NCBI GenBank assembly: GCA_030390025.1
Contig: JASTWF010000048.1
Location: forward strand, 1,612,001 to 1,676,000
Length of the DNA: 64,000 nucleotides
Origin: Squalus acanthias
Taxonomy: Eukaryota
Direction: 5' to 3'
Shown here: positions 3,191 through 62,159 of the stretch, one piece after another
How positions within the stretch are numbered: the stretch's first letter is position 1
Layout of the letters: every line of letters begins with the position of its first letter
Notes under the pieces: generated by a model
What the model was told of the DNA's origin: nothing
Databases searched by the model: none
Seen by the model: only the letters and a program-made list of their open reading frames with translations
Program-made: the position numbers and the translations under genes

Positions 3191-3885
3191 CTCCTGTTAC
3201 AGTGTAACAGGCTTTTGTGGCTGAATGGGCCTACTCCTGTACCTGTGTACACGGTCCCAAAGGGGCTCAAGGACTACTCCTGTTCATATGTAACAGGCTG
3301 AGCTGGACTGAATGACCTCCTTCTATTCCACTTTAAACCGTATTACAAGCAAACGTGCAGTTCATGGTACTAGAGCGCCATCTATAGTCTCCGTGGAGAA
3401 AGTCAACACACTGTCAGTGTGTAAAATCCCGACAGTCTATTTACATCCTTTGCTTCTTTCTATCATTCTTTCCTTGTTTCTAACATAATTTGTTTTCCTT
3501 CTTTCTTCCTTCCTTCCTTTCTGTCTTTCTTCTTCCTTCCTTCCTTCCTTCCTTTCTCTCTTTCTTCTTTCTTTCATCTTTCTTACATTCTGTCTTTCAT
3601 TCTTTCTATCATTCTTTCTTTTCTGCCTTGTTTCTATCTGTGTATCATTCTTTCTTTCTATCATTCTATCTTTCTTTCTATCTTCCTTTCGTTCTATCGC
3701 TATTCACTCCATAAAACTTAATCTTTCATTACAACTTTCTCAGTGCCTTTTTTCTCTTTTTCTCACTTTTACTGGAACCCGCTTCTTGATCTGGTCAAAA
3801 GCATGTTCGCTCTGCTAAAATTAAACGAACAGTACTCAGCACAGAACGGTTTTATCTCAAACAGGTGTTTCCTGCCGCCTTTGGG

Positions 3886-3924
3886 GTTTTTTGTTCAGCT
3901 CCTCCATGTCTCTGAGTCACTGTG
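3886..3924 (-). promoter_or_regulatory. 23-RSS of V2
   Basis: CACAGTG-23-ACAAAAAAC. Confidence 0.92.
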
Positions 3925-4430
3925 CAGACTCCAGGCGCAGTAATAAACGGCCGAGGGATTCGCCCGCAGGCTGGAGGACTTCAGGTTGAACTCTTTGTCA
4001 TTCGGTCGCTCGGCGGTGAAACCGTCCACCATCCCCTCTGGATTCACAATATTGGTACCCCCGGAGATAAACATGGATTGCGGCCCCTTCCCCGGGTCCT
4101 GTCTGTACCAGTACATGTAACTGCTACTGGCACCCTCCAAGTTGCACTTTAGATCGACACCCTCCCCAGCAAATTTGGAGACAGCGGCGGGAATCTGGCG
4201 GATAGTCTGCGAGTTCGCGTCTGAGAAAGAGACAGGGAGAGGAGAAGATTAGTAAACAGGGGCATTCTGGGTTGTGGGGAAAGAAAGAAGTAAAGGACGA
4301 GAGAAAGAGAGAAAGAAGTAAACAACGAAGGAAAGAAATAAATAGTAACGAATGGTTATTAACAAAGATTATTGTGTGAAAAAAATCACTTACATTGAAA
4401 TACAATTATGAAACTCAGTAACAGATACAT
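3925..4430 (-). CDS. TRBV: V2 (family B, TRBV30-like); leader 4394-4430, V exon 3925-4220; intact
   Basis: Leader MYLLLSFIIVFQ/GTAAGT; exon ANSQTIRQ...KCNLEG...WYRQ...YYCAWSL, 296 bp in frame. Confidence 0.88.
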
Positions 4431-4759
4431 CTTTAACTTGAAGATTTACTTTTAGAAATGAAACCAGCGAAAACAAGAGCGTTGCGTCTTGTGAGGATGC
4501 AACACGTTCTTTTCAAATCACTCAGGAAACATTGACGAGCGTAAGGAAGTGATTCAGGCCCACCCCCCATCTGTGACTGACAACACCGCTCCTCCACTCA
4601 CAGGCTGGTTGACAGCCCCGCCCCTCCCAGGCTGATTGACAGACACGCCCTCACTCCGTGAAATAATATCCCGCCCCCATACTGATTGACAGTCCAGCCC
4701 CTCCCTCTCTGTTTGGCAGTAAGTGGAGCAAACGGGAGCAGGTTTCAAAGTTGACCTAA

Positions 4760-5610
4760 ACAGCTGACGTGAATGAGAAAAAAACAGCGGCAGGTAGAGT
4801 TTAACGTGGAACGTGGGCATGTATGAGGTCATCCAATGGGGGCCTGAGGAAGAAACATCTGAGTATTTTCTAACTGATGAGAAGCTGGAAACTGTCGAGG
4901 AGCAAAGAAATTTAGTTGGCCAAGTAGACAAATCACTAAAAGCCAGGATAGAGGTGCAAAAAGGAATCAAAGAGATTAATGCAATGTTGCCCTTTATGTC
5001 AAGGAGGCTGGAATACAAACGGGAGGTAGTTATGCTTCAGTTGGGCAGAGCCCCGGTTAGACTCCATCTGGCAAACTAGGTACAGTTCTGGGGAACGCAC
5101 CTCAGGAAGGACGTTTTGTCCTTGGAGGGAGTGCAAGGCAGATTCACCAGAATGATACCAGGGCTTAGTGGGTTAAATTATGAAGACAGGTTGTATAGAA
5201 CAGCCTTGTCTGCCCTTGCGTATAAAAGATTGAGGGGTGAACTGATTCAGTCTTTTAATGTGAAAAGAAATTGATAGGGTAGATCGAATGAAAGTATGTC
5301 CACTGGTGGCGGAGTCCAGAACAAGGAGGCATAACTTAACAATGAGAGCTAAGCCTTTCAGGCGTGAGGGCAGGAAGCACTTCTTCACACAAAGGGCAGT
5401 GAGAATCTTCAACTCTCTGCCCGAAAACGATGTGCGTGCCGGCGGTCAATTGGAGATTTCTAGACCGAAATTGACAGATTTTTTTCTTGGTAAGCAGATC
5501 AAGAGATAGGAAGACAAAGCGGGTCGATGGATTTAATATATGATCCAGCTCGATCCAATTGAATGACGAAGTAGGCTTGGAGAGCTGAATGGCCTCCTCC
5601 TGTTCCTGTG
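4760..5610 (+). mobile_element. Decayed CR1-type LINE 3' fragment
   Basis: ORFs 4813-5079 and 5288-5509 are remnants of the CR1 RT C-terminus. Confidence 0.7.
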
Positions 5611-5635
5611 TTTCTGTAAACCATGTTCCAGACAC

Positions 5636-6801
5636 AGGGGTCAGTGCTGGGTCCCCAACTCTTTACAATCTATATTAACGATTTGGAGGAAGGGACCAAG
5701 TGTAACATATCAAAATTTGCAGATGATACAAAGATGGGAGGGAAAGTAGTGAGTGAGGAGGACATAAAAAACCTGCAAGGGGACATAGACAGGCTAAGTA
5801 AGTGGGCAGAGATTTGGCAGATGGAATACAACACTGGAAAGTGTGAGGTGATGCACTTTGGCAGGAAAAATCCTAGAGCAATTTATTATCTTAATGGCAA
5901 GAAACTGGAGAGTACTGAAGTGCAAAGGGATCTGGGGGTCCTGGTGCACGAAACTCAAAAGGTTAGTATGCAGGTGCAGCAAGTGATTAAGAAGGCAAAT
6001 GGAATGTTGGCTTTCATTGCTAGGGGGATAGAATATAAAAATAGGGAGGTATTGCTTCAGTTGTACAAGGTATTGGTGAGACCGCACCTGGAATACTGCG
6101 TACAGTTTTGGTGTCCTTACTTAAGGAAAGACATCCTTGCTCTCGAGGCAGTGCAAAAAAGGTTCACTCGGTTAATCCCGGGGATGAGGGGGTGGTCATA
6201 TGAGGAGAGGTTGGGTAGATTGGGACTCTACTCATTGGAGTTCAGAAGAATGAGAGGCGATCTTATTGAAACATATAAGATTGTGAAGGGGTTGGATCGG
6301 GTGGATGCGGGGAGGATGTTCCCGATGACGGGTGAGACGAGAACTAGGGGACATAGTCTTAGAATAAGGGGCTGCTCTTTCAAAACTGAGATGAGGAGGA
6401 ACTACTTCACTCAGAGGGTGGTAGGTCCATGGAATATGCTGCCACAAAAAGCTGTAGAAGCTACAACATTAATTAAATTTAAAACAGAAATAGACAGTTT
6501 CCTAGAAGTAAAGGGCATTAAGGGTTACGGGGAGCGGGCAGGAATTTGGACATGAGTCTAGGTTCGGATCGGTCATGGCCCTGTGGGTAGTGGAGCGGGC
6601 CCAGGGACTGTGTAGCCTGATTCTGCTCCTATTTCGTGTGTGCAATTCTGTTAGATGCAGGAGATGGTTCTGTGATAGATAGTAGATTGGCGGTTAGGAT
6701 CAGATCAGCCATGATCTTATTGAATGGCGGAGCAGGCTCGAGGGGCCGATTGGCCTACTCCTGCTCCTATTTCTTATGTTCTTATGTTCTTATGTTCTTA
6801 T
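5636..6801 (+). mobile_element. Young 5'-truncated CR1-clade LINE with intact RT C-terminal ORF (5623-6555)
   Basis: QGSVLGPQLFTIYINDL...FADDTK motifs, uninterrupted 310 aa, (TTCTTATG)n tail; absent from paralogous site near 46650. Confidence 0.92.
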
Positions 6802-7701
6802 GATGTGTTTCATGGTCCTGCAGCGCCCTCTGCTGTCAATGTGGAGAAACAGAGCGTCAGTCGACCAAAACCCACCCGTGTGTNNNNNNNNNNNNNNNNN
6901 NNNNNNNNNNNNNNNNNNNNNNNNNNNNNNNNNNNNNNNNNNNNNNNNNNNNNNNNNNNNNNNNNNNNNNNNNNNNNNNNNNNNNNNNNNNNNNNNNNNN
7001 NNNNNNNNNNNNNNNNNNNNNNNNNNNNNNNNNNNNNNNNNNNNNNNNNNNNNNNNNNNNNNNNTTCCTTTTCTCTTTGTCTTTCTTTCTGTCTTTCAAT
7101 TTCTCTCAACCTTTCACTCTCTCTTTCATTCCTTATTTCTTTCTTTCCTTCTTTCTTTCTTCCTTTCTTTCTTTCGTTCTTTCTTTCTCTATCCTTTACT
7201 TTTTCTTTCTCTATCATTATATTGTTCTATCTTTCTTTACTTCCATCTTTATTTCCTTCTTTCCTTTCTTTCTTTTTGCATTGATTATTTTCATTTGTTT
7301 TGCTCAGAGCCAACTACACCTACCATTTAAAGCCAGTGACCTCGGCTGACTGAATGTGCTCAACACTTCAAACAGGGCAGGTTGATGTTGTGTCCGATCA
7401 GCATGATCTTCTTTTCCTTTCACCCGCCATGTGCTTATCTAGCTTCCCCTTAACTGCAACTGTGTCATTCGTCTCCACTACTCCCTGTGGTAGCGAGTTC
7501 AACTTCTCGCCATTCTCTGGGTAAAGAACTTTCTCCTGAATTCCCTATTTGGACTTATTAGTGACTATCTTATATTTATGACCCCGAGCTTTTGTCTTCC
7601 TCACAAGTGGAAGCATCTTCCCTACATTTATCCTATCGCACGCCTTTCATAATTTTCGCTATCAGGTCATCCCTCAGTCTTTTCTTTTCTAGAGAAAGCA
7701 G

Positions 7702-8645: not shown

Positions 8646-9040
8646 CTAAAGCAAACTGAATTGAAAGATAAACGTGGGCTTACCAGAGCTGATCTCCAGA
8701 CTCAGACGGTGGAACAGGAGTGAGAGACACGCGGTCCCACACACTTCCATCAACCTCCGTTCCTCCTGACTCTTCTACAAGTGCACGGATTGGTTACTCG
8801 TTGCAGGGCGGGGATGACGTATGATGTCAGACGTCGACGCCTCACTATCTTGTCCCAAGTCATTTAATGCGTGGAGGGCAGAGTTGGGAATAGGGGATGC
8901 GAGGTGAGGGAGAGGATGGCGTAGGAAAGTAAAGAGGAGAGGAGTGGAAGGAGTGAAGGAGAAATCAAGCACTGAACTAAAAGCTAGTGCTGCTACCTGG
9001 TGGCGGAAAATGAGCACTGAGCTCCCATTCATCCGCTGCA

Positions 9041-9079
9041 GGGTTTTGCAGCTGGGGAGCCGCATTCTCAAACGCTGTG
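9041..9079 (-). promoter_or_regulatory. 23-RSS of V4
   Basis: CACAGCG-23-GCAAAACCC. Confidence 0.85.
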
Positions 9080-12062: not shown

Positions 12063-13806
12063 ATCAGAGAGAGAGATCAATAGAGAGATAGATATGTTCT
12101 CTCTCTCCCGATCTATCTATCAACAGTATTGGTTANNNNNNNNNNNNNNNNNNNNNNNNNNNNNNNNNNNNNNNNNNNNNNNNNNNNNNNNNNNNNNNNN
12201 NNNNNNNNNNNNNNNNNNNNNNNNNNNNNNNNNNNNNNNNNNNNNNNNNNNNNNNNNNNNNNNNNNNNNNNNNNNNNNNNNNNNNNNNNNNNNNNNNNNN
12301 NNNNNNNNNNNNNNNNNNNNNNNNNNNNNNNNNNNNNNNNNNNNNNNNNNNNNNNNNNNNNNNNNNNNNNNNNNNNNNNNNNNNNNNNNNNNNNNNNNNN
12401 NNNNNNNNNNNNNNNNNNNNNNNNNNNNNNNNNNNNNNNNNNNNNNNNNNNNNNNNNNNNNNNNNNNNNNNNNNNNNNNNNNNNNNNNNNNNNNNNNNNN
12501 NNNNNNNNNNNNNNNNNNNGATGGACGGACGGGCTGACAGATAGGGCTCAGATGTTTAAATTATGAAGGCAGGCTGAGGATTAATTGCAACTTTCAAGGT
12601 ATCTAGGTAGATGGAGCAAAGGTGAGTAGATGGAGTTGAGACACACATCAACCATTATCTAATTGAATGGGAGTCCAGGTTCGAGGGTCTCAATTGCCTC
12701 CTCTTTTTCCTAGGTAACAGGCTCGAGTAGTTACCCGGCCTTCTCCTGTCGCTGTGTAACTGGTATCGATTGCCATATTTTGCACATCCTGCTCTTACTT
12801 AACAGGCTAGAGGAATGTATGACCTCTTCCTGTTCCTGTTAAACAGGCGCAATGGGATTGAATGGCCTCCGCTTAATCCTGTCTTCAGAGCAAATCATAT
12901 GTAATTAACGGAGTGTTTCGTGGTCCTAGAGCGCCATCTCCTGGCCCCGGGGAGAACGCAAACACGGGTTTCAGTGTGTAAAATCCACCAGTCTTTTTAT
13001 TTTAGTTCCTTCTTTATATCTTCCTCTCATTCTTTCTACCATTCTTCTAGTCTTTCTTTCGTTCTCTCTTTCTTTCAATCCTTTTTTTCTTTCTTGATAT
13101 CTATTACTTTTTTTCTATCCATCTACCTTTCATTCTATCATTCTGCAGTGCATCTAACTTAATCTTTCTTTGCACCTTCTTCGGTTCCTTTATATCTAAT
13201 GGTCATAGAGGTAGGTTTTAAGGAGCGTCTTAAAGGACGATAGAGAGGTAGCGAGGCGGAGATTTTTAGCGAGGGAATTCCAGTGCTTAGGGCCGAGGCA
13301 ACAGAAGGCACAGCCACCAGTGGTTGAGCGATTATTGTCAGGGATGCTAAGGAGGGCAGAAATCGAGGAGCGCAGATATCTCGGGCGGTTGTGGGGCAAA
13401 AGGAAATTACAGAGATAGGGAGGGCCGAGGTCATGGAGGCATTTGTAAACAACGATAAGAATTTTGAAATCGAGGCGCTGCTTAACCAGAAGCCAATCTT
13501 GAAGATCTCTATCAGGTCACCCCTCAGCCTTCTCCTTTCTAGAGAAAAGAGATCCAGCCTGTTCAGCCTTTCATAACTTCTCAGTTCTGGTATCATTCTT
13601 GTTATTCCTGATTTTCAGCTTCTTCAGTGCCTCTGCATCTACTCTCTCTCGTTAAATCAAACCCGTCTCCTCTTCTTCTCAAAAGCACGGTCTTTCTCCA
13701 AAATAAACCAAACAGGACGCAGCACCGCGCGGTTTTATATTAAACAGTTGTTTCTTGCCGCCTTTCGAGTATTTTTTGTGCACCTCCATCTCTCTGAGTC
13801 ACTGTG

Positions 13807-13991: not shown

Positions 13992-15117
13992 TTGAGAAAG
14001 AGTCGGGGAGGAGGTCAATAAACCGGAACATTCGTGGCAATGGAGAAAGAAAGAAAGAAAGAAATAGAGACAGAAATAAAGAATGAAAGAAGAGAAACGA
14101 AAGAAAGAATATAAGGAAGAAAACGTAAAGAAAGGTCATTAGCAGGAATTATTTTTTGAAATAGTCCCTTATGTGACAGACTACGTAGACTAGACTTGTA
14201 GTCCATTGAGTATAGAAGATTGAGCAGTGATCCTACTGAGGTGTTTAAAATGTTAAAAGTATTGGAGACTGGAGATAGAGAGAAGGTATTCCCTCTGGTA
14301 CGGGTCTGTCCAGAACTAGGGGCCATCAGCTGAGCATTAAAGCGAGGCCGAACAAGAGTCATATCGGGAGGCACCTCTTGACACAAAGGATAATGAAAAT
14401 CTGTAGTTCTCTCGCCCAAAGTGCTGTTGAGGCCAGAGGTCAACTGGAGATTTTGTTCGGTAAAGGTATCATGGGTTATGGAACCAGCTGGAGTTTTGGT
14501 TCCGATACTGAACACCACACTTTCGGAAGTATGTGAAGCCTTTAGAGAGGGTGCAGAAAAGATTTAATAAATGGTACCAGGGACAAGGGTCTTCAGTCAC
14601 ATTCAGAGACTAGAGTAGATGGGATTGTTCTCCTTCGGGCGGAGATGATTAAGGGGGCATTTAATGGAAGTGTTCAAAATCATGAAGTGTTTTGTTGGAG
14701 TAAATCAGGAGAAACTGTATTCAGTGGCAGTAGCGTCGGTCACCAGTGGGCACAAATTTAAGCAACGGATAAGGGTAAAATGATTTTTTTTTAAATTGTA
14801 GAGCGAGCTGTTCTGGTTTGGAATGCACTGCCCGAATGGGTGGAGGAAGCAAATTCAATAATAACTTTCCAAAGGCAATTGGATACACACTTGAAGTGCG
14901 ACGTTTACTGGACTGTGGGGCAAAGGCACGGGAATAGGACTAATTGGATAGCTCTTTGAAAGCCCCGGTACAGGAAGGTGGGGCAGAAAGACCTCCTTCC
15001 GTGCTGTATCAGTCTATGATTCTATGACATGGTGGCAGAATATTTGCACGGAAATAAGGTCTAGTGCTGCCACCAGGCGGCGGGAAATCAGCATTTAACT
15101 CCCATTCATCCGCTGCA

Positions 15118-15156
15118 GGTTTTTGTAGCTGGGGTGCCGCTTTCTCAAACGCTGTG
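15118..15156 (-). promoter_or_regulatory. 23-RSS of V6
   Basis: CACAGCG-23-ACAAAAACC. Confidence 0.92.
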
Positions 15157-16075: not shown

Positions 16076-18335
16076 GATTTATTTATTCGACACTGGCTCG
16101 CTGGGTGATCGAGTATTGCTCAATCCCACTTTTAAAGCCGGTTTGTCTGTTCGAGCTGATTAAATACGAAGCTTCCGGTTGTAATTGTCATTGAAACGTC
16201 ACTTCCTGCGCAACCCACGCTCCATTCCATTCCTTCGGTAGTTCAGCAACGTCATAGAATCGTACAGCACAGAAGGTTAAGGAGAGAACTAATAGAGGTG
16301 TTCAAAATTACGAATGGTTTTGACAGAGTTGATAGGGAGAGACTATATCCACTGGCAGGAGGGACCTTAACCAGAGGGCACAGATTTAAGATAATTAGCA
16401 GTCGAACCAACGGGGAGATGAGGGGACATAAATGTTATTACAGACAGTTGTCATGATCTGGAATGCATTGCCTGAAATTGCGGTGGAAGCAGATTCAATA
16501 ATAACTTCCCAAAAGGGAATTGGATATAAACTCGATAAGGAAAAAAAAAAGGCTATGGGGAGAGAGCAGAGGAGTGAGACTCAATGAATAAGAGGGACCA
16601 AAACTAGGGACGTTATGAGATATACACTAATTAATCCAATAGGGAATTCAGGAGAAACATCTTTATCCAAAGTGTGGTGAGAATGTGGAACTTGCTAACA
16701 CGTGGAGTGGTTGAGCCAAATAGCATCGTTGCATTTAAGGGGAAGCTAGAAAGTACATGAGAGAGAAAGTAATAGAAGGTTATGTTAATGGTTGTATTGA
16801 AGAGGGATATGACGAAGCCCGGGGGGTTAAATTGGATAGGTCTTCAAAAGAGCCGGATCGGACCCGCTGTGTCGAATGGCCTCCTTCAGTGCTGTCGGAT
16901 TCTGATTCTAGGAAAAACGGAAAGTTGCAGGGAAAAAATGTTCTCCTGTTACATGCCGTGCAGGTTTCAGTTCCTATGTGCTGAACGAGAATTCAAGGGT
17001 TAAATTTATTGCTGGGCTGAATTCGCAGATTCTTTGAAAAGCACATCAAAAGGCGCTTCGAGTCTGATAGAGAACTGTTTAAACGGTTTTCAACAGATTC
17101 TGAAACTGCCTTCATGAGACAGGTGTCCCGGATACAAACATATCTGAAGATGCGTCTCGCATTCGCACAGTGTGCAACATCGGTGAGATGTTTAAGGGCT
17201 CTAACATTAACTGTTTCCTAATTGTATGGGGTGTTCTCCTTAGAGCAGAGAAGGTTAGGCCTAGATTTACCAGAATGGTACCAGGGATGAGGGACTTCAG
17301 TTTTGTGGAGAGACTGGAGAAGCCGGGATTGTACTCTCTACAGCAGTGAAGGTTAAGGGGAGATTTAATATAATTAGTCAAAACGATGAAGGATTTTGAT
17401 AGAGTAAATACGGAGAAACTGTTTCCACTGGCAGAAGGTTCGGTAACCAGAGGTCACAGGTTAAAAATAAGTGGAAAGAGAAGCAGAGGGCGAGATAAGT
17501 AGAATTCTTATACTCAGCACGTTATGTTCTGGAATGCACTGCTTGGAAGTGTGGTGGAAACAGATTCAAGATAGACTGGTTTGATAGCTCTTTCACAGAG
17601 CCAGCACAGACTGGATGTGTCGAATGGCCTCCTGTTGTGTTGTATAATCGGAGAAAATGCGGTTAGATAGATGGAAGATACGCATCACCCATGATCTAAT
17701 TGGCTAGCAGAGCAGAGTCGAGAGGTTGAATGTCCCCCTCTTGTTCCGATGCAACAGGCGCGAGTGGCTGTGTGGGGCTCCTCTAGTTATTGTGTAACAG
17801 GCTCGTGTGGCTGAATGGGCCTACTTCTGTACCTGTGTATACGGTCTCGAGGAGGCTTAATTGCCTTCCCCTGTTCCTATGTAACAGGCGCAAGGGGACT
17901 GAATGGTCTCCTTCTGTTCCATATTAAACAATATTACAAGCAACCGTGTGGTTCATGCACCTAGAGTGACCTCTTCAGTCTCTGTGGAGAAAGAAAACAC
18001 AGTGTCAGTGTGTGAAAGCACGACAGTCTTTTTACTTCATTTCCTTCTTTTTATCTTAGTTTCTTCTTCCTTTCTTTCTGTCTTTCTGTCTTCCTTTCTC
18101 GCTGGTTTCTTTCTTTACAACATTCTTTCTTTCTATCTTACTTTCGTTCTATCGCTTTTCACTATATTTATTTCATTCTTTCCAGCTTCTCAGTGCCTTT
18201 TTTAATCTAATTTCTCACTTTTATTCTAGCCCGTCTATTCTTCTTGTCAAACACTCGTTCGCTGTGCAAAATAAACCCAACGCGACGCGGCACCGAGCGG
18301 TTTTATCTTAAACAGGTGTTTTCTGCCGCCTTTGG

Positions 18336-18374
18336 GGTTTTTGTTGAGCTCCTCCATCTCAATGAGTCAATGTG
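18336..18374 (-). promoter_or_regulatory. 23-RSS of V7
   Basis: CACATTG-23-ACAAAAACC. Confidence 0.88.
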
Positions 18375-25200: not shown

Positions 25201-25861
25201 AATTCTTATGTTATTAAGTTCAACGTGAGTAAATTGAGTTAAGATACAGATCAGCCAAGATCTGGTTCAACGGCGGAGGGGCTCCAGGTGGCTGAATCTC
25301 CGTCTTCTGTTCCTGTTCAACAATGTTACAGGCACTGGTGGGTTTCATGGTCTTATAGCGCCCTCTATTGTCGCTTTGGAGAAATGAAGCACATTGCACG
25401 TGTACGAAGACCACAAGAATCTTTGTACTTTCTTTCTTTTTTCTTTCCTTCATTCTGTCATTTATTCTTTCATACTGTCTTTTTATCTCCATTCTTTCTT
25501 ATTTGCGTTTGATAATTTTATTTGTTTTCGTCAGAACAAGTTTGACCCTTGCACTCTGCGAACTGAATATTCTCAACACTTAAGCTTAGGATGGTTTGAT
25601 GTTGTAACCGATCACCTTCAAATCATTTCTCTATCATGCACTTATTTACCTTCCCCTTAACTGCATCTAAGATATTCGACTCAAACACTCCGTGTGGTAC
25701 CCAATCTCTGGTTAAAGAAATTTTTTCCTGAATTCCCGACTGGATTTATTAGTGACAAGCTTATATTTATGGACCCTGGTTTTGGTCTCACACACAAGTG
25801 GAAGAGGAAAAGTAGGGGCCATAAATATAACTACATATACAATCTGAAACATCTTCATAAT

Positions 25862-45469: not shown

Positions 45470-47409
45470 CTTTAACTTGAAGATTTACTTTTAAAAATGA
45501 AACCAGCGAAACAACAGAGTTGAGTCTTGTGAGGATCAAACACGCTCTTTTCAAGTCATTCAGGAAACCATGAGAAGCGTAAGGAAGTGATTCAGGCCAC
45601 CCGCCCATCTCGGATTGACAACACCGCTCCTCCACTCCCAGGCTGGTTGACAGCCACGCCCCTCCCAGGCTGATTGACAGACCCGCCCTCACTGCGTGAA
45701 ACATAGTCCCGCCCCTCCCTCTCTGTTTGGCAGTAAGTCGAGCAAACGGCAGCAGGAGTTGCAAGGCTGACCTAAACAGCTTACGTGAATGAGAAAAAAA
45801 CAGCGGCAGGTAGAGTTTAACGTGGAACGTGGGCAAGTATGAGGTCATCCACTGGGGGCCTGAGGAAGAAACTTCAGAGTGTTTTCTAACTGATGAGCAG
45901 CTGGAAACTGTCGAGGAGCAAAGAAATTTAGTTGGCGAGGTACACAAATCACTAAAAGCCAGGATAGAGGTGCAAAAAGGAATCAAACAGATTAATGGAA
46001 TTGTGGCCTTTATGTCAAGGATGCTGGAATAAAAAGGGAGGAAGTTATGCTTCGATTGAACAGAGCCCCGGTCAGACTCCATCTGGCAAACTAGGTTCAG
46101 TTCTGGGGAATGCAACTCAGGCAGGACGTTTTGTCCTTGGAGGGAGTGCAAGGCAGATTCACCAGAATGATACCAGGGCTTAGAGGGGTAAATTATGCAG
46201 ACAGGTTGCATAGACTAGGCTTGTATGCCCTTGAGTATAGAAGATTGTGGGGTGAACTGATTTAGTCTTTTAATGTTAAAAGGTGTTGATAGGGTAGATA
46301 GAATGAAAGTATGTCCAATTGTGGCGGAGTCCAGAGCAACGGGACATAACTTTACAGTGAGAGCTAAGCCTTCCAGGTGTGAGTGCAGGAAGCACTTCTT
46401 TACAGAAAGGGCAGTGAGAATCTTGAACTCTCTCCCCGAAAACGATGTGGGTGCTGGCGGTTAATTGGAGATTTCTCGACCGACATTGACAGATTTTTTC
46501 TTGGGTTAATAAGCAGATCAAGAGATAGGGAGCAAAAGCGGGTAGATGGAGCTGAGATAAGTTCCAGCTAAGATCCAGCAGAATTACGAAGCAGGCTTGA
46601 AGAGCTGAATGGCCTCCTGTTCCTGTGTTCCTATTAAAGCATGTTCCCCAGGCACTGATGTGTTTGATTGTCCTAGAGCGCCCTCTGCTGTCATTGTGGA
46701 GATACAGAGCGTCAGTCGACAANNNNNNNNNNNNNNNNNNNNNNNNNNNNNNNNNNNNNNNNNNNNNNNNNNNNNNNNNNNNNNNNNNNNNNNNNNNNNN
46801 NNNNNNNNNNNNNNNNNNNNNNNNNNNNNNNNNNNNNNNNNNNNNNNNNNNNNNNNNNNNNNNNNNNNNNNNNNNNNNNNNNNNNNNNNNNCTTCTCATT
46901 ATATCGTTCTTTCCTTCTTTACTTGTATCTTTATTTGTCACTTTCTTTCTTTTTTCATACCTTCTTTTCTTTCCTTCTTTTTGCATTGATTATTTTCATT
47001 TGCTTTGCTCAGAGCCAAATTCACCTTCCATTTAAAGCCAGTGACCTCGGCTGAGTGAATGTCCTCAACACTTCAGACAGGAGAGGTTGATGTTGTGCCC
47101 GATCAGCATGATCTTCTATTCCTTTCACCCCTCATATGCTTATCTAGCTTCCCCTTAACTGCAACTATGTCATTCGTCTCCACTACTTCCTGTGTTAGCG
47201 AGTTCAACATTCTCGCCACACTCTGGGTAAAGAAACTTCTCCTGAATTCCATATTTGGATTTATTAGTGGCTATCTTACATTTATGACCCCGAGCTTTGG
47301 TCTTCCCCACAAGTGGAAACATCTTCCCTGCATTTATCCTATCGAACGCCTTTCATAATTTTCGCTATCAGCTCATGCCTTAGTCTTCTCTTTTCTAGAG
47401 AAAGCAGCC

Positions 47410-50396: not shown

Positions 50397-50921
50397 TCAC
50401 TCGCTTTCTCTCTCTCTTTGTCTCCCTATTTCCTCTCTGTCTCTGTCTCTCACTCTCTCACTCCCTCACTCGCTAACTCTCTCTCTCTCTCGCGTTCTCT
50501 CTCTATTAAGTCAAACTGCATTGAAAGGTAAACGTGCGCTGAACAGAGCTGTTCTCCAGATTCAGACAGTGGAGCAGGAGTGAGAGATACGGGTTCCCAC
50601 AGGCCCGCACTTCCATCCCCCTCCACTCCTCCTGATTAAACCACAAGTGCACGGATTGGTTACTTGTTGCGGGGCGTGGATGACGTATAATGTCAGACTA
50701 CACGCCTCACCATCTTGTCCCCAGTCATTTAATGCGGGGAGGGCAGAGGAGGGAATAGGGGATGCGAGGGGCGGGAGACGAAGGAGTTGGAGAGAGGAGA
50801 GGAGGGGAAGGAGCGAAGTAGAAATCAAGCACTGAACTAATATCTAGTGCTGTCACCTGGTGGCGGTAAATGAGCACTGAACAGGTTTTGTAGCGGGGGA
50901 GCCGCTTTCTCAAACGCTGTG

Positions 50922-51063: not shown

Positions 51064-52603
51064 NNNNNNNNNNNNNNNNNNNNNNNNNNNNNNNNNNNNN
51101 NNNNNNNNNNNNNNNNNNNNNNNNNNNNNNNNNNNNNNNNNNNNNNNNNNNNNNNNNNNNNNNNNNNNNNNNNNNNNNNNNNNNNNNNNNNNNNNNNNNN
51201 NNNNNNNNNNNNNNNNNNNNNNNNNNNNNNNNNNNNNNNNNNNNNNNNNNNNNNNNNNNNNNNNNNNNNNNNNNNNNNNGTCGGATGAACGTACAGATAG
51301 GTCTTCGATGGTTAAATTAAGAGGTCAGGCTAAGAATCAATTGGAACTTTCAAGACTGAGATTGATAGGTTTTTGTTGCGTAAATGTATTGAGGAATATG
51401 GAGCAATGGTGATTAGTTTGAGATGAGACACACATTAGCCATGATATCATTGAATGGGAAGTCAGGCTCGAGGGGCTCAATGGCCTCCTCTTCTTCCTAG
51501 GTAACAGGCTCGCGTAGTTACCCGGCCTTCTCCGGTAGATGTGTACCTGGTTCTATTGCCATATTACCAGATTGTCACTGCCTGCTCCTATGTAACAGGC
51601 AAGAGGAATGTATGACCTCTTCCTTTTCCTGAGTAACAGGAGCAAGGGGATTGAATGGCTTCCTCTTCCTCCTGTCTTCGAGCAAAACATATTCAATCAA
51701 CTGAATGATTCGTGGTCCGAGAGTGCCCTCTGCTGTCCCAGTGGAGAACGAAAACACTGTGTTCAGTGTGTAATCTCCACCAGTCTTTTTATTTTAGTTC
51801 CTTCAATATATCTTTCTATCCTTCTTTCTGCCATTCTTTCAGTTTTTCGTTCGTTCTCTCTCCCTTTTTTTTCCTGGTTTTCTTTCTTGATATCTATTAC
51901 TATTTTTCTCACTATCTACATTTCATGTTATCATTCTGCAGTACATCTAACAATCTTTCTTTGCTTTTCTCTGTTCCCTTTATATACAATGATAAAAGAG
52001 GTAGGTTTTAAGGAGCGTTTTAATGTAGGAAAGAGAGGTAGCGAGGCGGACACGTTTAGTAAGGCAATTCCAGAGCTTAGGGCCGAGGCAACAGAAGGCA
52101 CGGCCACCGATGGTTGAGCGATATTATCAGGGATGCTAAGGAGGGCAGAATTAGAGGAGCACAGATATCTCGATGGCTTTTGGGGCTGAAGGAGATTACA
52201 GAGGTAGGGAGGGGCGAGGCCATGGAGGGATTTGAAAACAAGAATGAGAATTTTGAAATTGACGCGCTGCTTAACCGGGAGCCAATATTGAAGACCTCTA
52301 TCAGGTCACCACTCAGCCTTCTCCTTTCTAGAGAAAAGAGCCCCAGCCTGTTCAGACTTTCATGATAGTTATAACTTCTCAGTTCCTGTATCATTCTTGT
52401 TATTCCTGATTTTCAGCTCCTTCAGTGCCTTTACATCTAATCTCTAACGTTATATCAAACCCGTCTCCTCTTCTTCTCAAAAGCACCTTCGCTCTCCAAA
52501 ATATACCCAACAGGGCGGAGCAGCGACGGTTTTATCTTAAACAGGTGTTTCCTGCCGCTTTGGGGTTTTATTTTGAGCTCCTCCAGCTCTCTGATTCACT
52601 GTG

Positions 52604-53173: not shown

Positions 53174-54806
53174 ATTTTACTTGAAGCTTCTCTCTTAATA
53201 ATGAAAGGAGCGAGAACAGGAGAGTTGAATCTTGTGCGGATCCAACCCGCTCTATTCAAATCATTGAGGAAAACATGCACGGCATTATGAGGTGTTGCAG
53301 GTTTGACAACCCCGTCCCATCCTCACTGATTGGCAGCCCAGCTACTCCCTTTCCGACCGACATTAATAATAGCAGATGGGTGCTGGAATTTGCAAAGGGT
53401 ACATAGACAGATTAAATGAATGTCCAAAACAGAGATAGATGGAGTTTAATGTGGGCAAGGGTGATGTCATCCACTGTGACCCAAAGAAAGATAGTTTCGA
53501 GTATTTGCTAAATGGTGAGAAGCTGGGAACTGTGGAGGTGCAAAGGCATTTAGGTGTCAAGCTGCACAAATCGCTCTGGGTCAGTAGACAGGTGCTACAA
53601 TCAAAAAGTCTCATGGAATGTTGGCCTTTATCTCAAGGGTTCTGGAATACAGAGGAGAGAAAGTTATGCTTCAGTTGTACAGAGACCTGGTCAGACTCCA
53701 TCTGAAACAGAACGTTCAGTTCTGGGCAACACACTTCAGGAAGGACATATTGGCCTTGGAGGGAGTGCAGCGAAGATTCACCAGAATGATACCGGGGCTT
53801 AGACAGTTAACATATGAGAACAGATTACATAGACTAGGCTTGTATTCCATTGAGTAGATAAGATTGAGCAGTGATCCTACTGAGGTGTTGAAAATGTTAA
53901 AAGTATTGCAGACTGTAGATCGAGAGAAGGTATTTCCTCTGGTGAGGGGCAGTCCAGAACTCGGGGTCACCAGCTGGGCATTAAAGCGAGGCCGATCAAG
54001 TGTTATATCTGGAGGCACCTCTTGACACAAAGGATAATGAAAATCTGCAAATCTCTCGCCCAAAGTACTGTTGAGGCCAGAGCTCAACTGGAGATTTCAA
54101 AACTTCGATTTATGTTGTGGAAGGGTCTCATGAGTTTTGGAACCAGCCGGAGTTTTGGTTCCGATATTGAACACCACACTATCGGAAGTATATGAAGCCT
54201 TTAGAGGGGGCGCAGAGGAGATTTAATAAATGGTCCCAGGGACGAGGGTCTCCATTCAAATTGAGAGACTGGAGAAGAAGGGATTGTTCTCCTTATGGCG
54301 GAGATGATTAAGGGGGCATTTAATGGAACTGTTCAAAATCATGAAGGGTTTTGATAGAGTAAATCAGGAGAAACTGTATCCAGTGGCAGTAGCGTCGGTC
54401 ACCAGTCGGCAAAATTTAAGGAACGGATAAGGGTATGATGATGTTATTATTTATTGTACAGCGCGCTGTTATGGTTTGAAATGCACTGCCCGAATGGTTG
54501 GAGGAAGAAGATTCAATAATAACTTTCCAAAGGCAATTGGATACACTCTTGAAGCGGGACGTTTACTGGGCTATGAGGCAAAGACAGGGGAATAGGACTA
54601 ATTGGATAGCTCTTTGAAAGAGCCGGTACAGCAAGGAATGACCTCGTTCCGTGCTGTATCATTCTATGATTCTATGACATGTTGGCAGAGTATTTGCACG
54701 GAAATAAAGTCTAGTGCTGCCACCAGGCGGCGGGAAATGAGCACTGAATTCCCAGTCATCCGCTGCAGGATTTTGTAGCTGGGGAGCCGCTTTCTCAAAC
54801 GATGTG

Positions 54807-58996: not shown

Positions 58997-59280
58997 TTTC
59001 GAGGGGCTGAATGGCCTCCTCCTGTTCCTGTGTAACAGGCTCGAGGGGCTAAATGTCCTCCTCCATTTCCTGTGTAACAGGCTCGAGGGGTTAAATGGCC
59101 TCCTCCTGTTCCTATGTAACAGATTCGTTGGGGCTGAATGGCCACCTCCTGTTCCTGTGTAACAGGCTCGAGGGGCTGAATGGCCTATCCTGTTCCTGTG
59201 TATACGGTCCCGAGAATGCTTAATGGCCTTCTCCTGTTCCTATGTAACAGGCTCAAGGGGACTGAATGCCCTTCTGTTCC
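58997..59280 (+). repeat. About 40-bp tandem repeat derived from the CR1 3' end
   Basis: About 7 units of GTAACAGGCTCGAGGGGCTGAATGGCCTCCTCCTGTTCCT; related arrays near 3165, 12680, 17720, 32170, 38960, 44200, 51465. Confidence 0.85.
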
Positions 59281-59780
59281 ATATTAAACCATATTACAAG
59301 CTACCGTGTGGTTCATGGCCCTAGAGCGCCCTCTTCAGTCTCTGTGGAGAAAGAAAACACAGTGTCAGTGTGTAAAAGCCCGACAGACTTATTATTTAAT
59401 TTCCTTCTTTCTATCTTTCTTTTTTTCTTCCTGTGTATCTTTCTTTCTTTCTTTCTGTCTATCTTTCTTCCTTTTTTCTTCTTTTCAAAATTCTTTCTTT
59501 CTTTATATCATTCTTTCATTCACTCTTTCTCTCTTTTTCCGTTCATCCTGTCTTTCTTTACTTCTTCCTTTCTTTCTATCTTCCTTTCGTTCTATGGTTC
59601 TTCACTATATTTAATTAATCTTTCTTTGCAGCTTCGCAGTGCCTTTTTTAATCTAATTTGTCGCTTTTATTCCAGCCAGTCTGTTATTCTTGTCAAAAAC
59701 ACGTTCACTCTGCAAAATAAACCAAACAGGAAGAGGCACCGCGCTGTTTCAACATTAACAGGTGTGTCCTGCCGCTTTTG

Positions 59781-59819
59781 GGTTTTTGTTGAGCTCCTCC
59801 ATCTTTCTGAGTCACTGTG
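59781..59819 (-). promoter_or_regulatory. 23-RSS of V21
   Basis: CACAGTG-23-ACAAAAACC. Confidence 0.93.
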
Positions 59820-60335
59820 AAGACTCCAGGCGCAGTAATACACGGCCGAGTGATTCGCCTGCAGGCTGGAAGACTTCAGGTTGAACTCGTTGCCATTCGG
59901 TCGTTTGGCGGTGAAACCGTCCACCGTCCCCTCTGGATCCACGTGATTGGTAGTCTTGGAGTAAAACATCAACTGCGGCCCCTTCTCCGGGTCCTGTCTG
60001 TACCAATACATGTCACCGCTACTGGCGCCCTCCACAACGCACTTTAGTTCCACTCGCTGCCCAGGAATATTGGAGAGAGCGGTGGGAGTCTGGCGGACAC
60101 ACTCTGAGTTCACGCCTGGGAAAGAGATGGAGAGAGGATGTGGTCAGTAAACAGGGGCATTCTGGGTTGTGGGGAAAGAAAGAAGTAAAGAGCGAGAGAA
60201 AGAGAGAATGAAGGAAACAACGAAAGAAAGAAAGAAAGAAAAACGAAATACTAACGAAAGTTTATTAACAAAGATTATTGTGTGAAAAAATCACTTACTT
60301 TGAAATAAGATCATGAGACTCAGTAACAGATACAT
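59820..60335 (-). CDS. TRBV: V21 (family B); leader 60299-60335, V exon 59820-60115; intact
   Basis: MYLLLSLMILFQ + SVNSECVRQ...KCVVEG...WYRQ...YYCAWSL. Confidence 0.87.
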
Positions 60336-62159
60336 CTTTAACTTTAAGCTTTACTTTTAAAAGTGAAATCAGCAAAAACAAGAGCGTTGAGTTTTGTGAG
60401 GATCCAACCCGCTTTTTTCAAAGCGGAAGGAAGGGATGCAGGCCCCTCACTCTCTGATTGACAGCACCGCACCTCCACTCCCAGGCTAATTCACAGCCCC
60501 GCCCCTTCCCACGCTGATTGACAGACCCGCGCTCTCACTCTCTGCAACATAGTGCCGCCCCTCCCACGCTGATTGACAGTCCAGCGCCAACCTCTCTGCT
60601 TGGCAGGAAGTAAAGCAGACGGGAGCAGGAAGTTGCAAACTTGACCTAAGCAGCTTACGTGAATGAGAAAAAAACAGCGGCAGGTAGTGTTTATCGTGGA
60701 ACGTGGGCAAGTATGAGGTCATGCACTGGGGGCCTGAGGAAGAAACATCAGTGTATTTTCTAACTGATGAGAAGCTGGAAACTGTCGATGAGCAAAGAAA
60801 TTTAGTTGGCCAGGTAAATAAATCACTAAAAGCCAGGATAGAGTTGCAAAAAAGAATCAAACACATTGATGGAATGTTGGCCTTTATGTCAAGGAGGCTG
60901 GAATGCAAAAGGGAGGAAGTTATGCTTCAGTTGGACAGAGCTCTGGTCAGACTCCATCTGGTAAACTAGGTTCAGTTCTGGGGAACGCACCTCAGGAAGG
61001 ACGTTTTGTCCTTGGAGGGAGTGCAAGGTAGATTCACCAGAATGATACCAGGGCTTAGAGGGTTAAATTATGAAAACAGGTTGCATAGACTAGGCTTGTC
61101 TGCCCTTGAGTATAGAAGATTGAGGGGTGAACTGATTTAGTCTTTTAATGTTAAGAGGAGTTGACAGGGTAGATAGAATGAAAGTATGTCCAATGCTGGC
61201 GGAGTCCAGAACAATGGGGCATAACTTTACAGTGAGAGCTAAGCCTTGCAGGTGTGAGGGCAGGAAGCACTTCTTCACACAAAGGGCAGTGAGAATCTTC
61301 AACTCTCTACCCCAAAACGATGTGGGTGTTGGCGGATCAATTGGAGATTTCTAGACCGAGATTGATAGATTTTTTCTGGAGTAAGTAGATCAAGAGATAG
61401 TCAGAAAAAGTGGATTAATGGATTTAAGATAAGTTTCAGCTATGATCCAGTAGAATGTCGAAGCAGGCTTGAAGAGCTGAATCGCCTCCTGTGTTCCAGG
61501 CAACGAAGTGTTTCATGGTCCTGCACCGCCCTCTGCTGTCCCTGTGGGGCAACACAGCTTCCGTCGTCAAAAACCCAGCCGTCTGTTTACTTTCATTCTT
61601 TCGTTCTTTCTTTCGTTCTTTCGTTCCTTCTTTGTTTCATTCTTTCATTCTTTTTTCTTTCTGCCTTTCTTTCTCTATCCTTTTCGTTTTATTTCTCTTT
61701 GATTATATAGCTCTTTCCTTCGTTACCTGTATCTTTATTTCCCTCTTTCTCTCTTTTCCTAATGCCTTCTTTCCTTTCTTTCTTTTTGCATTAATTATTT
61801 TCGTTTGTTTTGCTCAGACCCAACTCCACCTACCTCTGAAATCCAGCGAACTCGGCTGCCTGAATGTGCTCAACACTTCAGACAGGACTTGTTGATGTTG
61901 TGACCCATCAACATATCCTTTTATTCCTTATTCCTTAATGTGTTGATGTAGATTCCCCTTAAATGCATCTATGCTACTCGTCTCAAGTATCCCTTTGGTA
62001 GCGAGTTCAATGTTCTCGCCATTCTCTGAGCAAAGAAGTTTCTCCTGAATTCCCTATTTGGATTTATTAGTGACTATCTTATATTTATGACACCGAGCTT
62101 TGGTCTTCCCCACATGTGGAAACATTTTCGATTCATCGATCCTATCGAAACACTTTCAT

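What the first reader, a model, noticed from the sequence alone, without database searches (positions are those of the whole stretch)
3374..61538. Co-oriented CTCF-like site downstream of nearly every family-B V unit
Seen: 15 copies of AGCGCCMYCT(G/A/T)NNG-like sequence (on the - strand e.g. CAGCAGAGGGCGCT) at 3374, 6822, 12930, 17965, 19996, 25357, 29674, 32464, 34878, 39223, 44409, 46677, 51722, 59325 and 61525. All point the same way as V transcription and usually lie 0.35-1.5 kb beyond the RSS; the core looks better kept than the flanks. Known: this matches the CTCF core, and oriented V-associated CTCF elements steer cohesin loop extrusion and RAG scanning in mammalian Igh/Tcr loci. Inference: that architecture already exists in this (probably chondrichthyan) TCR locus, with the recombination centre and convergent sites at lower coordinates.
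Basis: partly seen in the sequence, partly recalled or inferred. Interest (0 to 1): 0.85.

Follow-up and report, generated by a model that had tools for sequence, protein, structure and literature searches.

The report
Oriented CTCF-like sites behind V genes
A short DNA block with a CTCF-type binding motif recurs once per duplicated V-gene unit of a T-cell-receptor-like array, always pointing the same way, and its key letters are kept better than neighbouring DNA, which hints that the loop-anchoring layout known from mouse antibody genes is ancient.

Summary
All 15 sites exist and lie on one strand. That strand puts the CTCF-forward motif on the - strand, the strand of every V gene in the window.

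The 15 sites are not independent. They are paralogous copies of one ~85-bp block. The block belongs to a ~2.2-kb tandem unit made of a family-B V, a 5'-truncated LINE, the block and a TTTC microsatellite.

Only 10 of 15 are good CTCF matches. Four are weak and one has decayed. The five poor sites lie below the best-preserved family-B Vs.

Several tests point to constraint of the CTCF type:
- The 10- and 14-letter cores are the least-substituted windows of 224 aligned columns.
- Substitutions avoid the high-information positions of the motif (rho -0.58, p 0.009).
- Simulated neutral decay keeps about 3 strong sites, against 10 observed.
- The core CpG survives in 13 of 15 copies.

The block is not part of the adjacent LINE. 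Family-C Vs carry a separate CTCF-like site 17-37 bp behind their RSS.

CTCF occupancy, looping and the position of D-J-C were not tested. The scan noted the same pattern in neighbouring windows of this genome.

The parts
3343..3426 (-). Block copy 1 (sub-family 1). Motif at 3374-3387, weak CTCF match (9.0 bits). It lies 494 bp below the RSS of the family-B V at 3874-4218.
6800..6870 (-). Block copy 2 (sub-family 3). Motif at 6822-6835, the best match (19.95 bits). It lies below the V-B relic at 7709-7834. A young LINE is nested 25 bp away, and an assembly gap starts at 6884.
12902..12983 (-). Block copy 3 (sub-family 2). Motif at 12930-12943, 18.65 bits. It lies about 0.8 kb below the defective V-B at 13741-13980.
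17934..18017 (-). Block copy 4 (sub-family 1). Motif at 17965-17978 has decayed (7.2 bits; the CpG is lost and matrix position 14 is changed). It lies 354 bp below the RSS of the intact V-B at 18306-18668.
19965..20048 (-). Block copy 5 (sub-family 3). Motif at 19996-20009, 17.5 bits. It lies 2.5 kb below the V-B relic at 22486-22599 and 1.3 kb above V-B 18306.
25326..25408 (-). Block copy 6 (sub-family 3). Motif at 25357-25370, 13.9 bits. It lies 1495 bp below the RSS of the V-B at 26845-27201.
29643..29722 (-). Block copy 7 (sub-family 3). Motif at 29674-29687, 16.8 bits. It lies about 0.8 kb below the V-B at 30452-30787, whose RSS heptamer is degenerate.
32433..32516 (-). Block copy 8 (sub-family 1). 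Motif at 32464-32477, weak (9.4 bits). It lies 466 bp below the RSS of the intact V-B at 32932-33279.
34846..34930 (-). Block copy 9 (sub-family 3). Motif at 34878-34891, 15.4 bits. It lies 0.8 kb below the family-C V at 35678-36040 and 1.6 kb above V-B 32932.
39194..39276 (-). Block copy 10 (sub-family 2). Motif at 39223-39236, 18.55 bits. It lies 834 bp below the RSS of the V-B at 40044-40406.
44378..44461 (-). Block copy 11 (sub-family 1). Motif at 44409-44422, weak (10.8 bits). It lies 500 bp below the RSS of the V-B at 44914-45258.
46648..46712 (-). Block copy 12 (sub-family 3). Motif at 46677-46690, 17.0 bits. It lies below the V-B relic at 47412-47540, and an assembly gap starts at 46723.
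51693..51773 (-). Block copy 13 (sub-family 2). Motif at 51722-51735, 17.8 bits, with the CpG changed to TpG. It lies 825 bp below the RSS of the V-B at 52535-52897.
59294..59377 (-). Block copy 14 (sub-family 1). Motif at 59325-59338, weak (11.6 bits). It lies 439 bp below the RSS of the intact V-B at 59775-60113. This is the copy on which sequencing-run contigs were laid.
61493..61573 (-). Block copy 15 (sub-family 3). Motif at 61525-61538, 18.45 bits. It lies 1.4 kb above V-B 59775, with no V above it inside the window.
8988..9008 (-). Separate CTCF-like site 35 bp behind the RSS nonamer of the family-C V at 9021-9381 (17.0 bits on the - strand).
15065..15085 (.). Near-palindromic CTCF-like site 35 bp behind the RSS of the family-C V at 15098-15466 (14.7 bits on the - strand, 17.65 on the + strand).
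35637..35655 (-). Weak CTCF-like site (10.0 bits) 37 bp behind the RSS of the family-C V at 35678-36040.
50848..50868 (-). CTCF-like site 17 bp behind the RSS of the family-C V at 50884-51063 (19.3 bits on the - strand, 14.0 on the + strand).
54715..54735 (.). Near-palindromic CTCF-like site 35 bp behind the RSS of the family-C V at 54748-55116 (14.7 bits on the - strand, 17.65 on the + strand).

Best explanation
The 15 sites are paralogous copies of one ~85-bp non-coding block that sat just downstream of an ancestral family-B V gene. The block lay next to the 3' end of an old, oppositely oriented LINE insertion. It was multiplied together with the V gene and the LINE fragment by tandem duplication of a ~2.2-kb unit.

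The block carries a CTCF-type core whose forward orientation matches V transcription. I think it most likely that this core has been kept by selection because CTCF binds it. As an oriented CTCF-binding element it would stall cohesin that extrudes the V array toward a downstream recombination centre. That would hold nearby V RSSs there longer and help fold the array, as V-region elements do in mouse Igh.

**Shown:** presence, orientation, paralogy, independence from the LINE, and CTCF-shaped constraint.
**Inferred:** CTCF binding, cohesin stalling, and any effect on V(D)J recombination.
For: - **Motif and orientation.** Eleven exact matches on one strand against 0.02 expected. The 15-letter CTCF consensus at up to 2 mismatches gives 18 matches against 4.58 expected, with 0 of 100 shuffles reaching 18. 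Fifteen are on the - strand, and the 3 on the + strand are palindromic partners of - strand family-C sites.
- **Matrix scores.** Ten of 15 sites score at least 13.8 bits, and 14 of 15 at least 9.
- **No ascertainment bias.** The flank-only profile recovers exactly the 15 copies.
- **Constraint.** The 10-mer and 14-mer cores are the least-substituted windows of 224 columns.
- **Position-specific pattern.** High-information matrix positions 4, 5, 9, 10, 13 and 14 average 0.67 steps. The remaining 13 positions average 2.15, close to the flank level of 2.11. Spearman rho is -0.58, p 0.009. The changes seen at positions 11, 12 and 16 are those the matrix tolerates.
- **Neutral simulation.** On the flank tree it gives 3.2 strong sites against 10 observed (P 0.0014). 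At a lower assumed rate P is 0.013.
- **CpG.** The core CpG is kept in 13 of 15 copies. Six other candidate CpGs of the same alignment keep 3-8 of 15.
- **Not LINE-borne.**
  - A young LINE ends in its 8-mer repeats 25 bp before the block at 6822.
  - The other young LINE (48493-50400, - strand) has no motif behind its tail.
  - In four runs, 217-790 contigs leave the window inside a tail copy, at 59117, and continue into unrelated sequence.
  - Contigs showing a variant number 96-104 at tail places, 16-18 in the block and 7-33 in the V-B unit (run X1).
- **Independent parallel.** All five family-C Vs have their own CTCF-like site 17-37 bp behind the RSS.
- **Background.** Skate TAD boundaries carry oriented CTCF motifs found with MA0139.1 (PMC10115646). 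Mouse V-region sites point toward D-J-C (PMC5859386).
Against: - All copies descend from one element and form three clades. Independent lineages are therefore few, and the statistics treat a small tree.
- The five sub-family-1 sites (3374, 17965, 32464, 44409, 59325) share derived changes at matrix positions 6 and 8. They score only 7.2-11.6 bits and miss the consensus at up to 2 mismatches. They lie below the five V-B exons that look most intact, while the best sites lie below V relics or defective Vs.
- The full 19-column window ranks only 34th of 206.
- In the 10-unit alignment the motif bins (0.77 identity) barely exceed their neighbours (0.67-0.75). They are below the V 3' end and RSS (0.83-0.92).
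- Matrix position 4 (C in 88% of known sites) is A in 12 of 15 copies.
- About 15 bp outside the CTCF core are conserved as strongly and remain unexplained.
- The upstream CTCF module quoted in PMC12885311 is not evident by my reading of the block's - strand sequence against that consensus. No tool was run for this.
- The matrix was recalled from memory and not checked against JASPAR.
- There are no occupancy, methylation or contact data.
Confidence: 0.5

Rival explanations
1. Passive passenger. The motif arose once by chance, or for an unrelated reason, in the spacer behind an ancestral family-B V. It was simply copied by tandem duplication. Its apparent conservation reflects the youth of the copies, gene conversion and alignment noise in the flanks. 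It has no function.
For: - All 15 copies are paralogous and are embedded in a ~2.2-kb duplicated unit together with a dead LINE fragment.
- In the 10-unit alignment the motif bins are only slightly above their neighbours.
- The 19-column window ranks 34th of 206.
- A whole clade of five copies carries a weakened motif, and one copy has decayed.
- Site strength does not follow V integrity.
Against: - Flank-based neutral simulation gives P 0.0014-0.013 for 10 strong sites.
- Substitutions avoid exactly the high-information positions (rho -0.58, p 0.009). Neither gene conversion nor a young age predicts that.
- The seven long-branched sub-family-3 copies all keep at least 13.9 bits.
- The core CpG is kept in 13 of 15 copies, against 3-8 of 15 elsewhere in the alignment.
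- Family-C Vs have evolved or kept a separate site.
Confidence: 0.25
2. The block is a regulatory element for a factor other than CTCF. It could be, for example, a V-downstream enhancer or a promoter of germline or antisense transcripts. The conserved 25-30 bp (GTTTCATGGTCCTAG plus the GC-rich half of the core) would then be the real target, and the resemblance to CTCF would be partial.
For: - The lowest-substitution 19- and 30-column windows are shifted to one side of the CTCF core and include 13-20 bp outside it.
- The CCA half of the core varies, and matrix position 4 does not fit.
- Three copies read AGATGGCGC, which resembles a YY1 core. That consensus is recalled and was not tested.
- Conserved elements downstream of VH8 genes are reported at mouse Igh (PMC10390877, start of the abstract in the listing).
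Against: - Positions 5, 9, 10, 13 and 15 of the CTCF matrix are invariant in 15 of 15 copies.
- The variable positions are the degenerate ones.
- The YY1-like reading fits only 3 of 15 copies.
- No other motif was identified.
Confidence: 0.15
3. The motif is transposon-borne. It would be part of the 3' end of the adjacent CR1-like LINE, or of a SINE sharing that tail, and would have been spread by retrotransposition, as B2 SINEs spread CTCF sites in mouse.
For: - Every block lies 45-77 bp 3' of a + strand LINE tail (GGCTGAATGGCCTCCT...).
- LINE RT fragments ending near the C-terminus precede nearly all sites.
- The LINE RT coding sequence itself carries a weak CTCF-like motif, on the opposite strand.
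Against: - Young LINE copies end in 8-mer repeats without the block.
- Twelve other tail copies in the window are followed by unrelated sequence.
- In 4 runs, hundreds of contigs diverge from the window at the tail end, with no agreement in what follows (0.37-0.38).
- Contig support for the block is on the scale of the V-B unit, not of the tail.
- The flank-only profile finds the block only in these 15 places.
Confidence: 0.05

Closest known systems
VH-associated CTCF-binding elements of the mouse and human Igh locus
   Same: - Many CTCF motifs lie in the V array, and over 98% share one orientation relative to V transcription.
- The sites travel with V-gene families.
- There are two positional classes: RSS-associated, and intergenic or upstream.
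- The local motif is extended and locus-specific.
- The mouse core quoted in the paper, GACCAGCAGGGGGC, resembles the - strand core here (GACAGCAGAGGGCGC).

Source: PMC6746451, abstract and sections 7 and 16 read in full.
   Different: - This is a TCR-type V array in what the scan takes to be a cartilaginous fish.
- The family-B block lies 354-1495 bp behind the RSS, not 17-19 bp. Only the family-C sites (17-37 bp) resemble the RSS-associated class.
- In mouse proximal VH genes, functional genes have the site and pseudogenes lack it (PMC7930373 passages). Here the strongest sites lie below relics.
- Binding is untested.
CTCF sites in the V parts of mouse Tcrb and Tcra/Tcrd
   Same: - The loci are TCR loci.
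- In Tcrb all bound V-region sites point toward D-J-C. In Tcra/Tcrd 129 of 144 do.

Source: PMC5859386, abstract, Table 2 and orientation passages.
   Different: - The mouse TCR sites lie mostly at or upstream of V promoters, with only '2 near RSS' in Tcrb.
- Here the block is linked to the RSS side of family-B Vs, although in a tandem array it is also 1.3-2.6 kb upstream of the next V.
- Which TCR locus this is was not resolved.
PAIR elements and V8E downstream elements of the distal mouse VH region
   Same: They are repeated intergenic regulatory modules, multiplied together with V-gene duplication units. They bind CTCF among other factors.

Sources: PMC7930373 passages; PMC10390877, start of the abstract in the listing only.
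   Different: - PAIR elements are larger and bind PAX5 and E2A.
- They drive antisense transcription.
- Nothing of that kind was tested or seen here.
Transposon-borne CTCF sites (rodent B2 SINE type; recalled, from no call)
   Same: A CTCF-like motif appears in many copies next to retroelement sequence.
   Different: The block is not part of the LINE and was multiplied by tandem DNA duplication, not by retrotransposition.

Membership tests
Vertebrate CTCF-binding element | Match to the CTCF core motif (15-letter consensus / MA0139.1) | tested here: met
   Ten of 15 sites have at most 2 mismatches to CCASYAGRKGGCRSY and score at least 13.8 bits. Four score 9.0-11.6, and one (17965) scores 7.2. 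Both the consensus and the matrix were recalled from memory, not fetched.
Vertebrate CTCF-binding element | Constraint that follows the information content of the motif | tested here: met
   Spearman rho is -0.58, p 0.009. High-information positions average 0.67 steps, against 2.15 for the rest. Position 4 is an exception.
Vertebrate CTCF-binding element | CTCF occupancy in vivo or in vitro (ChIP, CUT&RUN, EMSA) | not testable with these tools
   The 22 runs listed carry no library description (library '-'). Their kind is given as DNA?, ? or RNA?.
Vertebrate CTCF-binding element | Unmethylated core CpG | tested here: inconclusive
   The evidence is indirect only. The CpG is retained in 13 of 15 copies, against 3-8 of 15 at six other candidate CpGs.
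V-associated CTCF elements of antigen-receptor loci (Igh type) | Uniform orientation relative to V transcription, pointing toward D-J-C | tested here: met
   All 15 blocks and all 5 family-C sites have a - strand match, and all V genes are on the - strand. Two family-C sites score higher on the + strand, being near-palindromes. The position of D-J-C is unknown.
V-associated CTCF elements of antigen-receptor loci (Igh type) | Fixed short distance from the RSS (17-19 bp in mouse) | tested here: not met
   The family-B block lies 354-1495 bp away. Family-C sites lie 17-37 bp away, close to the mouse rule.
V-associated CTCF elements of antigen-receptor loci (Igh type) | Present at functional Vs and absent or broken at pseudogenes | tested here: not met
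   The five weakest sites lie below V-B exons that are open through their coding part (one, 44914, has a stop within the last two codons). The strongest lie below three V relics and the truncated V at 13741.
V-associated CTCF elements of antigen-receptor loci (Igh type) | Convergent sites at the recombination-centre end; cohesin-dependent contacts | not testable with these tools
   D-J-C is not in the window. The scan's notes on this piece do not locate it.
Transposon-borne CTCF site | Motif lies inside the transposon and is found wherever the transposon is | tested here: not met
   - Young LINEs lack it.
- Twelve other tails in the window lack it.
- Contigs of 4 runs leave the window at the tail end.
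- The flank-only profile finds no copies beyond the 15.

The most novel reading that the evidence does not exclude
The blocks, together with the RSS-proximal family-C sites, are CTCF-bound and selectively maintained. They form a co-oriented grid of loop-extrusion barriers across a megabase-scale TCR V array of a cartilaginous fish. [quoted passage not shown]
Probability: 0.35. Interest if true: 0.75.

Novelty: new member of a known kind. Interest (0 to 1): 0.55.

Why it matters
V-region CTCF elements and cohesin-driven RAG scanning have been worked out almost entirely in mouse Igh, Igk and Tcr loci. In the paper I read, evolutionary conservation is stated only for mice, rabbits, chimpanzees and humans (PMC6746451, section 16).

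This array shows, from sequence alone, CTCF-shaped constraint on co-oriented V-linked sites. If it does come from a cartilaginous fish, the origin of that architecture becomes directly testable. The tests would be CTCF/RAD21 profiling and Hi-C of thymus in one species, read against V usage.

The array also offers natural variants for such a test. Strong, weak and decayed copies of the same element sit behind near-identical V genes.

My four literature searches found no paper on V-linked CTCF sites in cartilaginous fish.

Tried and rejected
- **LINE 3' tail as carrier of the motif: rejected.** This was my first reading, because every site follows a + strand RT C-terminal fragment and a LINE tail. 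reject it. The tool warns that contig depth is not copy number, so I rely on where contigs end and on counts of contigs.
- **Leader-like exon on the + strand (ATG ... GTAAAA): rejected.** The frame is broken by a stop in copy 3374, by my reading of the sequence. The listed ORFs are low-complexity run-ons.
- **Fossil RSS inside the block (CACAGTG / ACAAAAACC-like strings): rejected.** The spacers are 7 or 25 bp and the strings are not shared by the copies (my reading).
- **Splice-acceptor look on the - strand (pyrimidine tract plus CAG just before the core): noted only.** It was not pursued, and no RNA run holds the stretch.
- **Known RNA family: none.** No Rfam family reaches its gathering score anywhere in the window.
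- **Upstream CTCF module (CAGCTGTTCC-like; PMC12885311): not evident.** This is my reading of the block's - strand sequence against that consensus. No tool was run, and I treat it as inconclusive.
- **Locus type: unresolved.** PDB searches give TCR beta V domains as the best single-chain TCR hits for families B and C, among many scFv constructs. The large protein search found no candidate, which says nothing, as the operators note.
- **Position of D-J-C: not found.** The scan's notes did not give it.

Full report
**What is there.**
- The four other listed places are one- or two-mismatch versions.
- Read on the - strand these are CAGCAGAGGGCGCT-type strings, which is the forward CTCF core.
- Six-frame ORFs and tblastn with window-derived queries show that every V exon lies on the - strand.
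- The V exons fall into three families: A (843, 41855, 58169), B (ten full-length exons and three relics holding only residues 1-35/43) and C (five).
- Family B and C exons end in 23-spacer RSSs.
- Their closest single-chain relatives with solved structures are TCR beta V domains, among many antibody constructs.
- I could not decide which TCR locus this is (one search was blank). The organism is coded in the sequencing-run tool.

**The sites are copies of one element.**
- Printing the flanks and aligning them shows an ~85-bp homologous block around every motif.
- On the + strand the block reads: a degenerate end of a LINE tail, then GTTTCATGGTCCTAG, the core, TC.C.GTGGAGAAAG, and then a TTTC-rich microsatellite that runs up to the family-B RSS.
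- Upstream of each block lies a + strand CR1-like LINE fragment. On the far side of each family-B V, the same LINE starts again at about RT residue 392.
- The basic repeat is therefore V-B, truncated LINE, block. Its length is 2.0-2.4 kb where nothing else is inserted (coordinates).
- Higher-order blocks of the type A-B-relic-C-B are also duplicated.
- A tree of the flanks gives three clades: sub-family 1 (3374, 17965, 32464, 44409, 59325), sub-family 2 (12930, 39223, 51722) and sub-family 3 (the other seven, on long branches).
- The number 15 is thus explained by tandem duplication and is no evidence of function in itself.
- A profile built from the flanks with the core cut out finds exactly the same 15 places at E up to 10. 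No copies with a destroyed core have been overlooked.

**How CTCF-like the sites are.**
- With the 15-letter consensus at up to 2 mismatches, the window has 18 matches against 4.58 expected, and 0 of 100 shuffles reach 18.
  - Ten of these are block sites, and five are - strand sites behind family-C RSSs.
  - The three + strand matches are the palindromic other strand of family-C sites.
- I also used a count matrix recalled from memory as MA0139.1, which I did not verify. It gives 38 hits of at least 8 bits, 23 on the - strand and 15 on the + strand.
- The block sites score 19.95 to 13.86 bits for ten copies, 11.6-9.0 for four, and 7.2 for 17965.
- The five low scorers are exactly sub-family 1. 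They share T at matrix position 6, and four of the five share A at position 8 (3374 has T); 17965 has in addition lost the CpG and position 14.

**Is the core kept beyond descent?**
- Fitch counts on the flank tree give 0.8 steps per column for AGCGCCCTCT and 1.21 for the 14-mer. These are the lowest of all windows of those sizes among 224 well-occupied columns, whose mean is 2.11.
- The 19-column matrix window (1.68) ranks only 34th of 206.
- The lowest 19- and 30-column windows are shifted onto the neighbouring GTTTCATGGTCCTAG.
- In an alignment of ten whole units the motif bins have 0.77 mean pairwise identity. Their neighbours have 0.67-0.75, and the V 3' end, the RSS and the first 60 bp behind it have 0.83-0.92.
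- Inside the 19 columns, substitutions track the matrix.
  - Positions 5, 9, 10, 13 and 15 are invariant in 15 of 15 copies.
  - Positions 11, 12 and 16 vary only between the letters the matrix accepts.
  - High-information positions average 0.67 steps, against 2.15 for the rest.
  - Spearman rho is -0.58, p 0.009.
- Position 4 is the exception: it is A in 12 of 15 copies, where CTCF sites usually have C.
- I simulated neutral change on the flank tree at the flank rate, starting from the consensus. It leaves 3.2 of 15 copies at or above 13.8 bits, against 10 observed (P 0.0014). At a rate of 1.5 steps per column P is 0.013.
- The core CpG is CG in 13 copies and TG in 2. Six other candidate ancestral CpGs in the same alignment keep CG in 3-8 of 15.
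- These tests share one small tree and one alignment, so I read them as moderate evidence, not strong evidence.

**Is the motif transposon-borne?** I first thought so.
- Against that reading:
  - The youngest LINE (5635-6803) ends in four TTCTTATG repeats 25 bp before the block at 6822. It is itself nested behind an older tail at 5583.
  - The other young LINE (48493-50400, - strand) has its tail at 48441 and no motif behind it.
  - Twelve further tail copies are followed by unrelated sequence.
- Contigs of four public runs were laid on 58900-60200.
  - Between 217 and 790 contigs per run leave the window at 59117, inside a tail copy. Their loose parts agree only at 0.37-0.38.
  - Contigs showing a variant number 96-104 at tail places, 16-18 in the block and 7-33 in the V-B part (run X1).
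  - The summed word depth falls from 10^5-10^6 in tail bins to about 10^3 in the two block bins. V-B bins show 3x10^2 to 6x10^3. The tool warns that this is not copy number.
- The block therefore belongs to the V-B unit, not to the LINE family.
- A contig of a second organism (run X6) spans tail plus block, with 36 differences and 5 gaps over 59130-59386. I could not see its letters.

**A second class of site.**
- Each of the five family-C Vs has a CTCF-like, partly palindromic site 17-37 bp behind its nonamer.
- Four of these are strong and one (35637) is weak.
It resembles the mouse RSS-associated class at 17-19 bp (PMC6746451, section 7).
- All three family-A RSSs run into assembly gaps within about 45-105 bp.

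**Points against a simple one-site-per-working-V model.**
- The five weakest sites lie below V-B exons that are open through the coding part (3874, 18306, 32932, 59775) or open up to a stop within the last two codons (44914).
- The strongest sites lie below three V relics, a truncated V (13741), a V with a degenerate heptamer (30452) and a V with Cys in place of the conserved Trp (40044).
- Each of the five weak-site Vs does have a strong site 1.3-2.6 kb upstream (coordinates).
- In a tandem array 'downstream of one V' is also 'upstream of the next'.

**Assembly gaps.**
- No motif abuts an N run.
- The flanks of gaps 6884-7064 and 46723-46891 match the ungapped paralogue at 61298-61984 in the same order and strand. 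Both sides therefore belong to one unit.
- The distances from 6822 and 46677 to the next V relic cross a gap and are not reliable.
- Gaps 12136-12519 and 38503-38800 could not be checked this way. Gaps 40443-40651 and 41611-41827 were not tested.

**Comparison with what is known.**
- Mouse Igh has about 140 V-region CTCF sites, over 98% in one orientation relative to VH transcription. They are either 17-19 bp behind the RSS or upstream/intergenic. Conservation is stated for mouse, rabbit, chimpanzee and human (PMC6746451: abstract, sections 7 and 16).
- Mouse Tcrb and most Tcra/Tcrd V-region sites point toward D-J-C but sit mainly at promoters (PMC5859386, passages and Table 2).
- Mutating or repairing RSS-adjacent sites changes VH use, which is read as stalling of cohesin-driven RAG scanning (PMC7930373, passages).
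- Skate TAD boundaries carry oriented CTCF motifs found with MA0139.1 at a threshold of 8 (PMC10115646, passages).
- Four searches gave no paper on V-linked CTCF sites in cartilaginous fish.
- The scan itself noted the same pattern in neighbouring windows of this genome (s1-889969, s1-890159, s1-889059, s1-888648). Those notes are unchecked and are not independent evidence.

**Verdict.**
- This is a real, oriented, V-linked and duplicated element, with sequence evidence for CTCF-type constraint.
- It is most likely a new member of the known class of V-region CTCF elements, in a lineage where none has been described.
- Binding and function are inferred, and the array includes weak and decayed copies.

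Noticed in passing
window 10453, 14737, 16365, 36941, 57084 (+ strand): Five CTCF-like matrix hits (8.1-14.9 bits) lie on the + strand. All fall at the same place in + strand LINE RT fragments, within RT residues ~561-586. They are transposon-borne motifs pointing the opposite way to the V-linked ones.
   Followed up: partly
window 32182-32400 and 59005-59300: The ~42-bp LINE 3' tail unit (GGCTGAATGGCCTCCT...) is tandemly repeated 5-7 times just beside sub-family-1 blocks. Tail matches number 44 on the + strand against 2 on the - strand, so nearly all LINE remains are antisense to the V genes.
   Followed up: partly
window 5583-6803: A young, 5'-truncated LINE ends in four TTCTTATG repeats. 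It is nested exactly between an older LINE tail and the block at 6822. This is consistent with insertion into the older element's tail.
   Followed up: partly
window 590-818, 41611-41827, 57544-58089: Every family-A V RSS is followed within about 45-105 bp by an assembly gap. Earlier notes (s1-888352, s1-888287) report CTCF minisatellites behind family-A RSSs elsewhere. Nothing can be seen here, and the gaps were left unfilled.
   Followed up: no
An Rfam search of the whole window at gathering scores returned no match.
   Followed up: partly
window 15065-15085 and 54715-54735: The family-C sites are near-palindromes and score higher on the + strand (17.65 bits) than on the - strand (14.7). Their orientation is therefore ambiguous, unlike that of the family-B blocks.
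   Followed up: partly
window 7709-7834, 22486-22599, 47412-47540: Three family-B V relics keep only the first 35-43 residues of the V exon and have lost the 3' half together with the RSS. Each still has a strong block below it.
   Followed up: partly
window 59130-59386 (run X6, organism B): A contig from a run labelled as a different organism spans LINE tail plus block, at about 86% likeness. The arrangement may therefore be shared with a related species.
   Followed up: no
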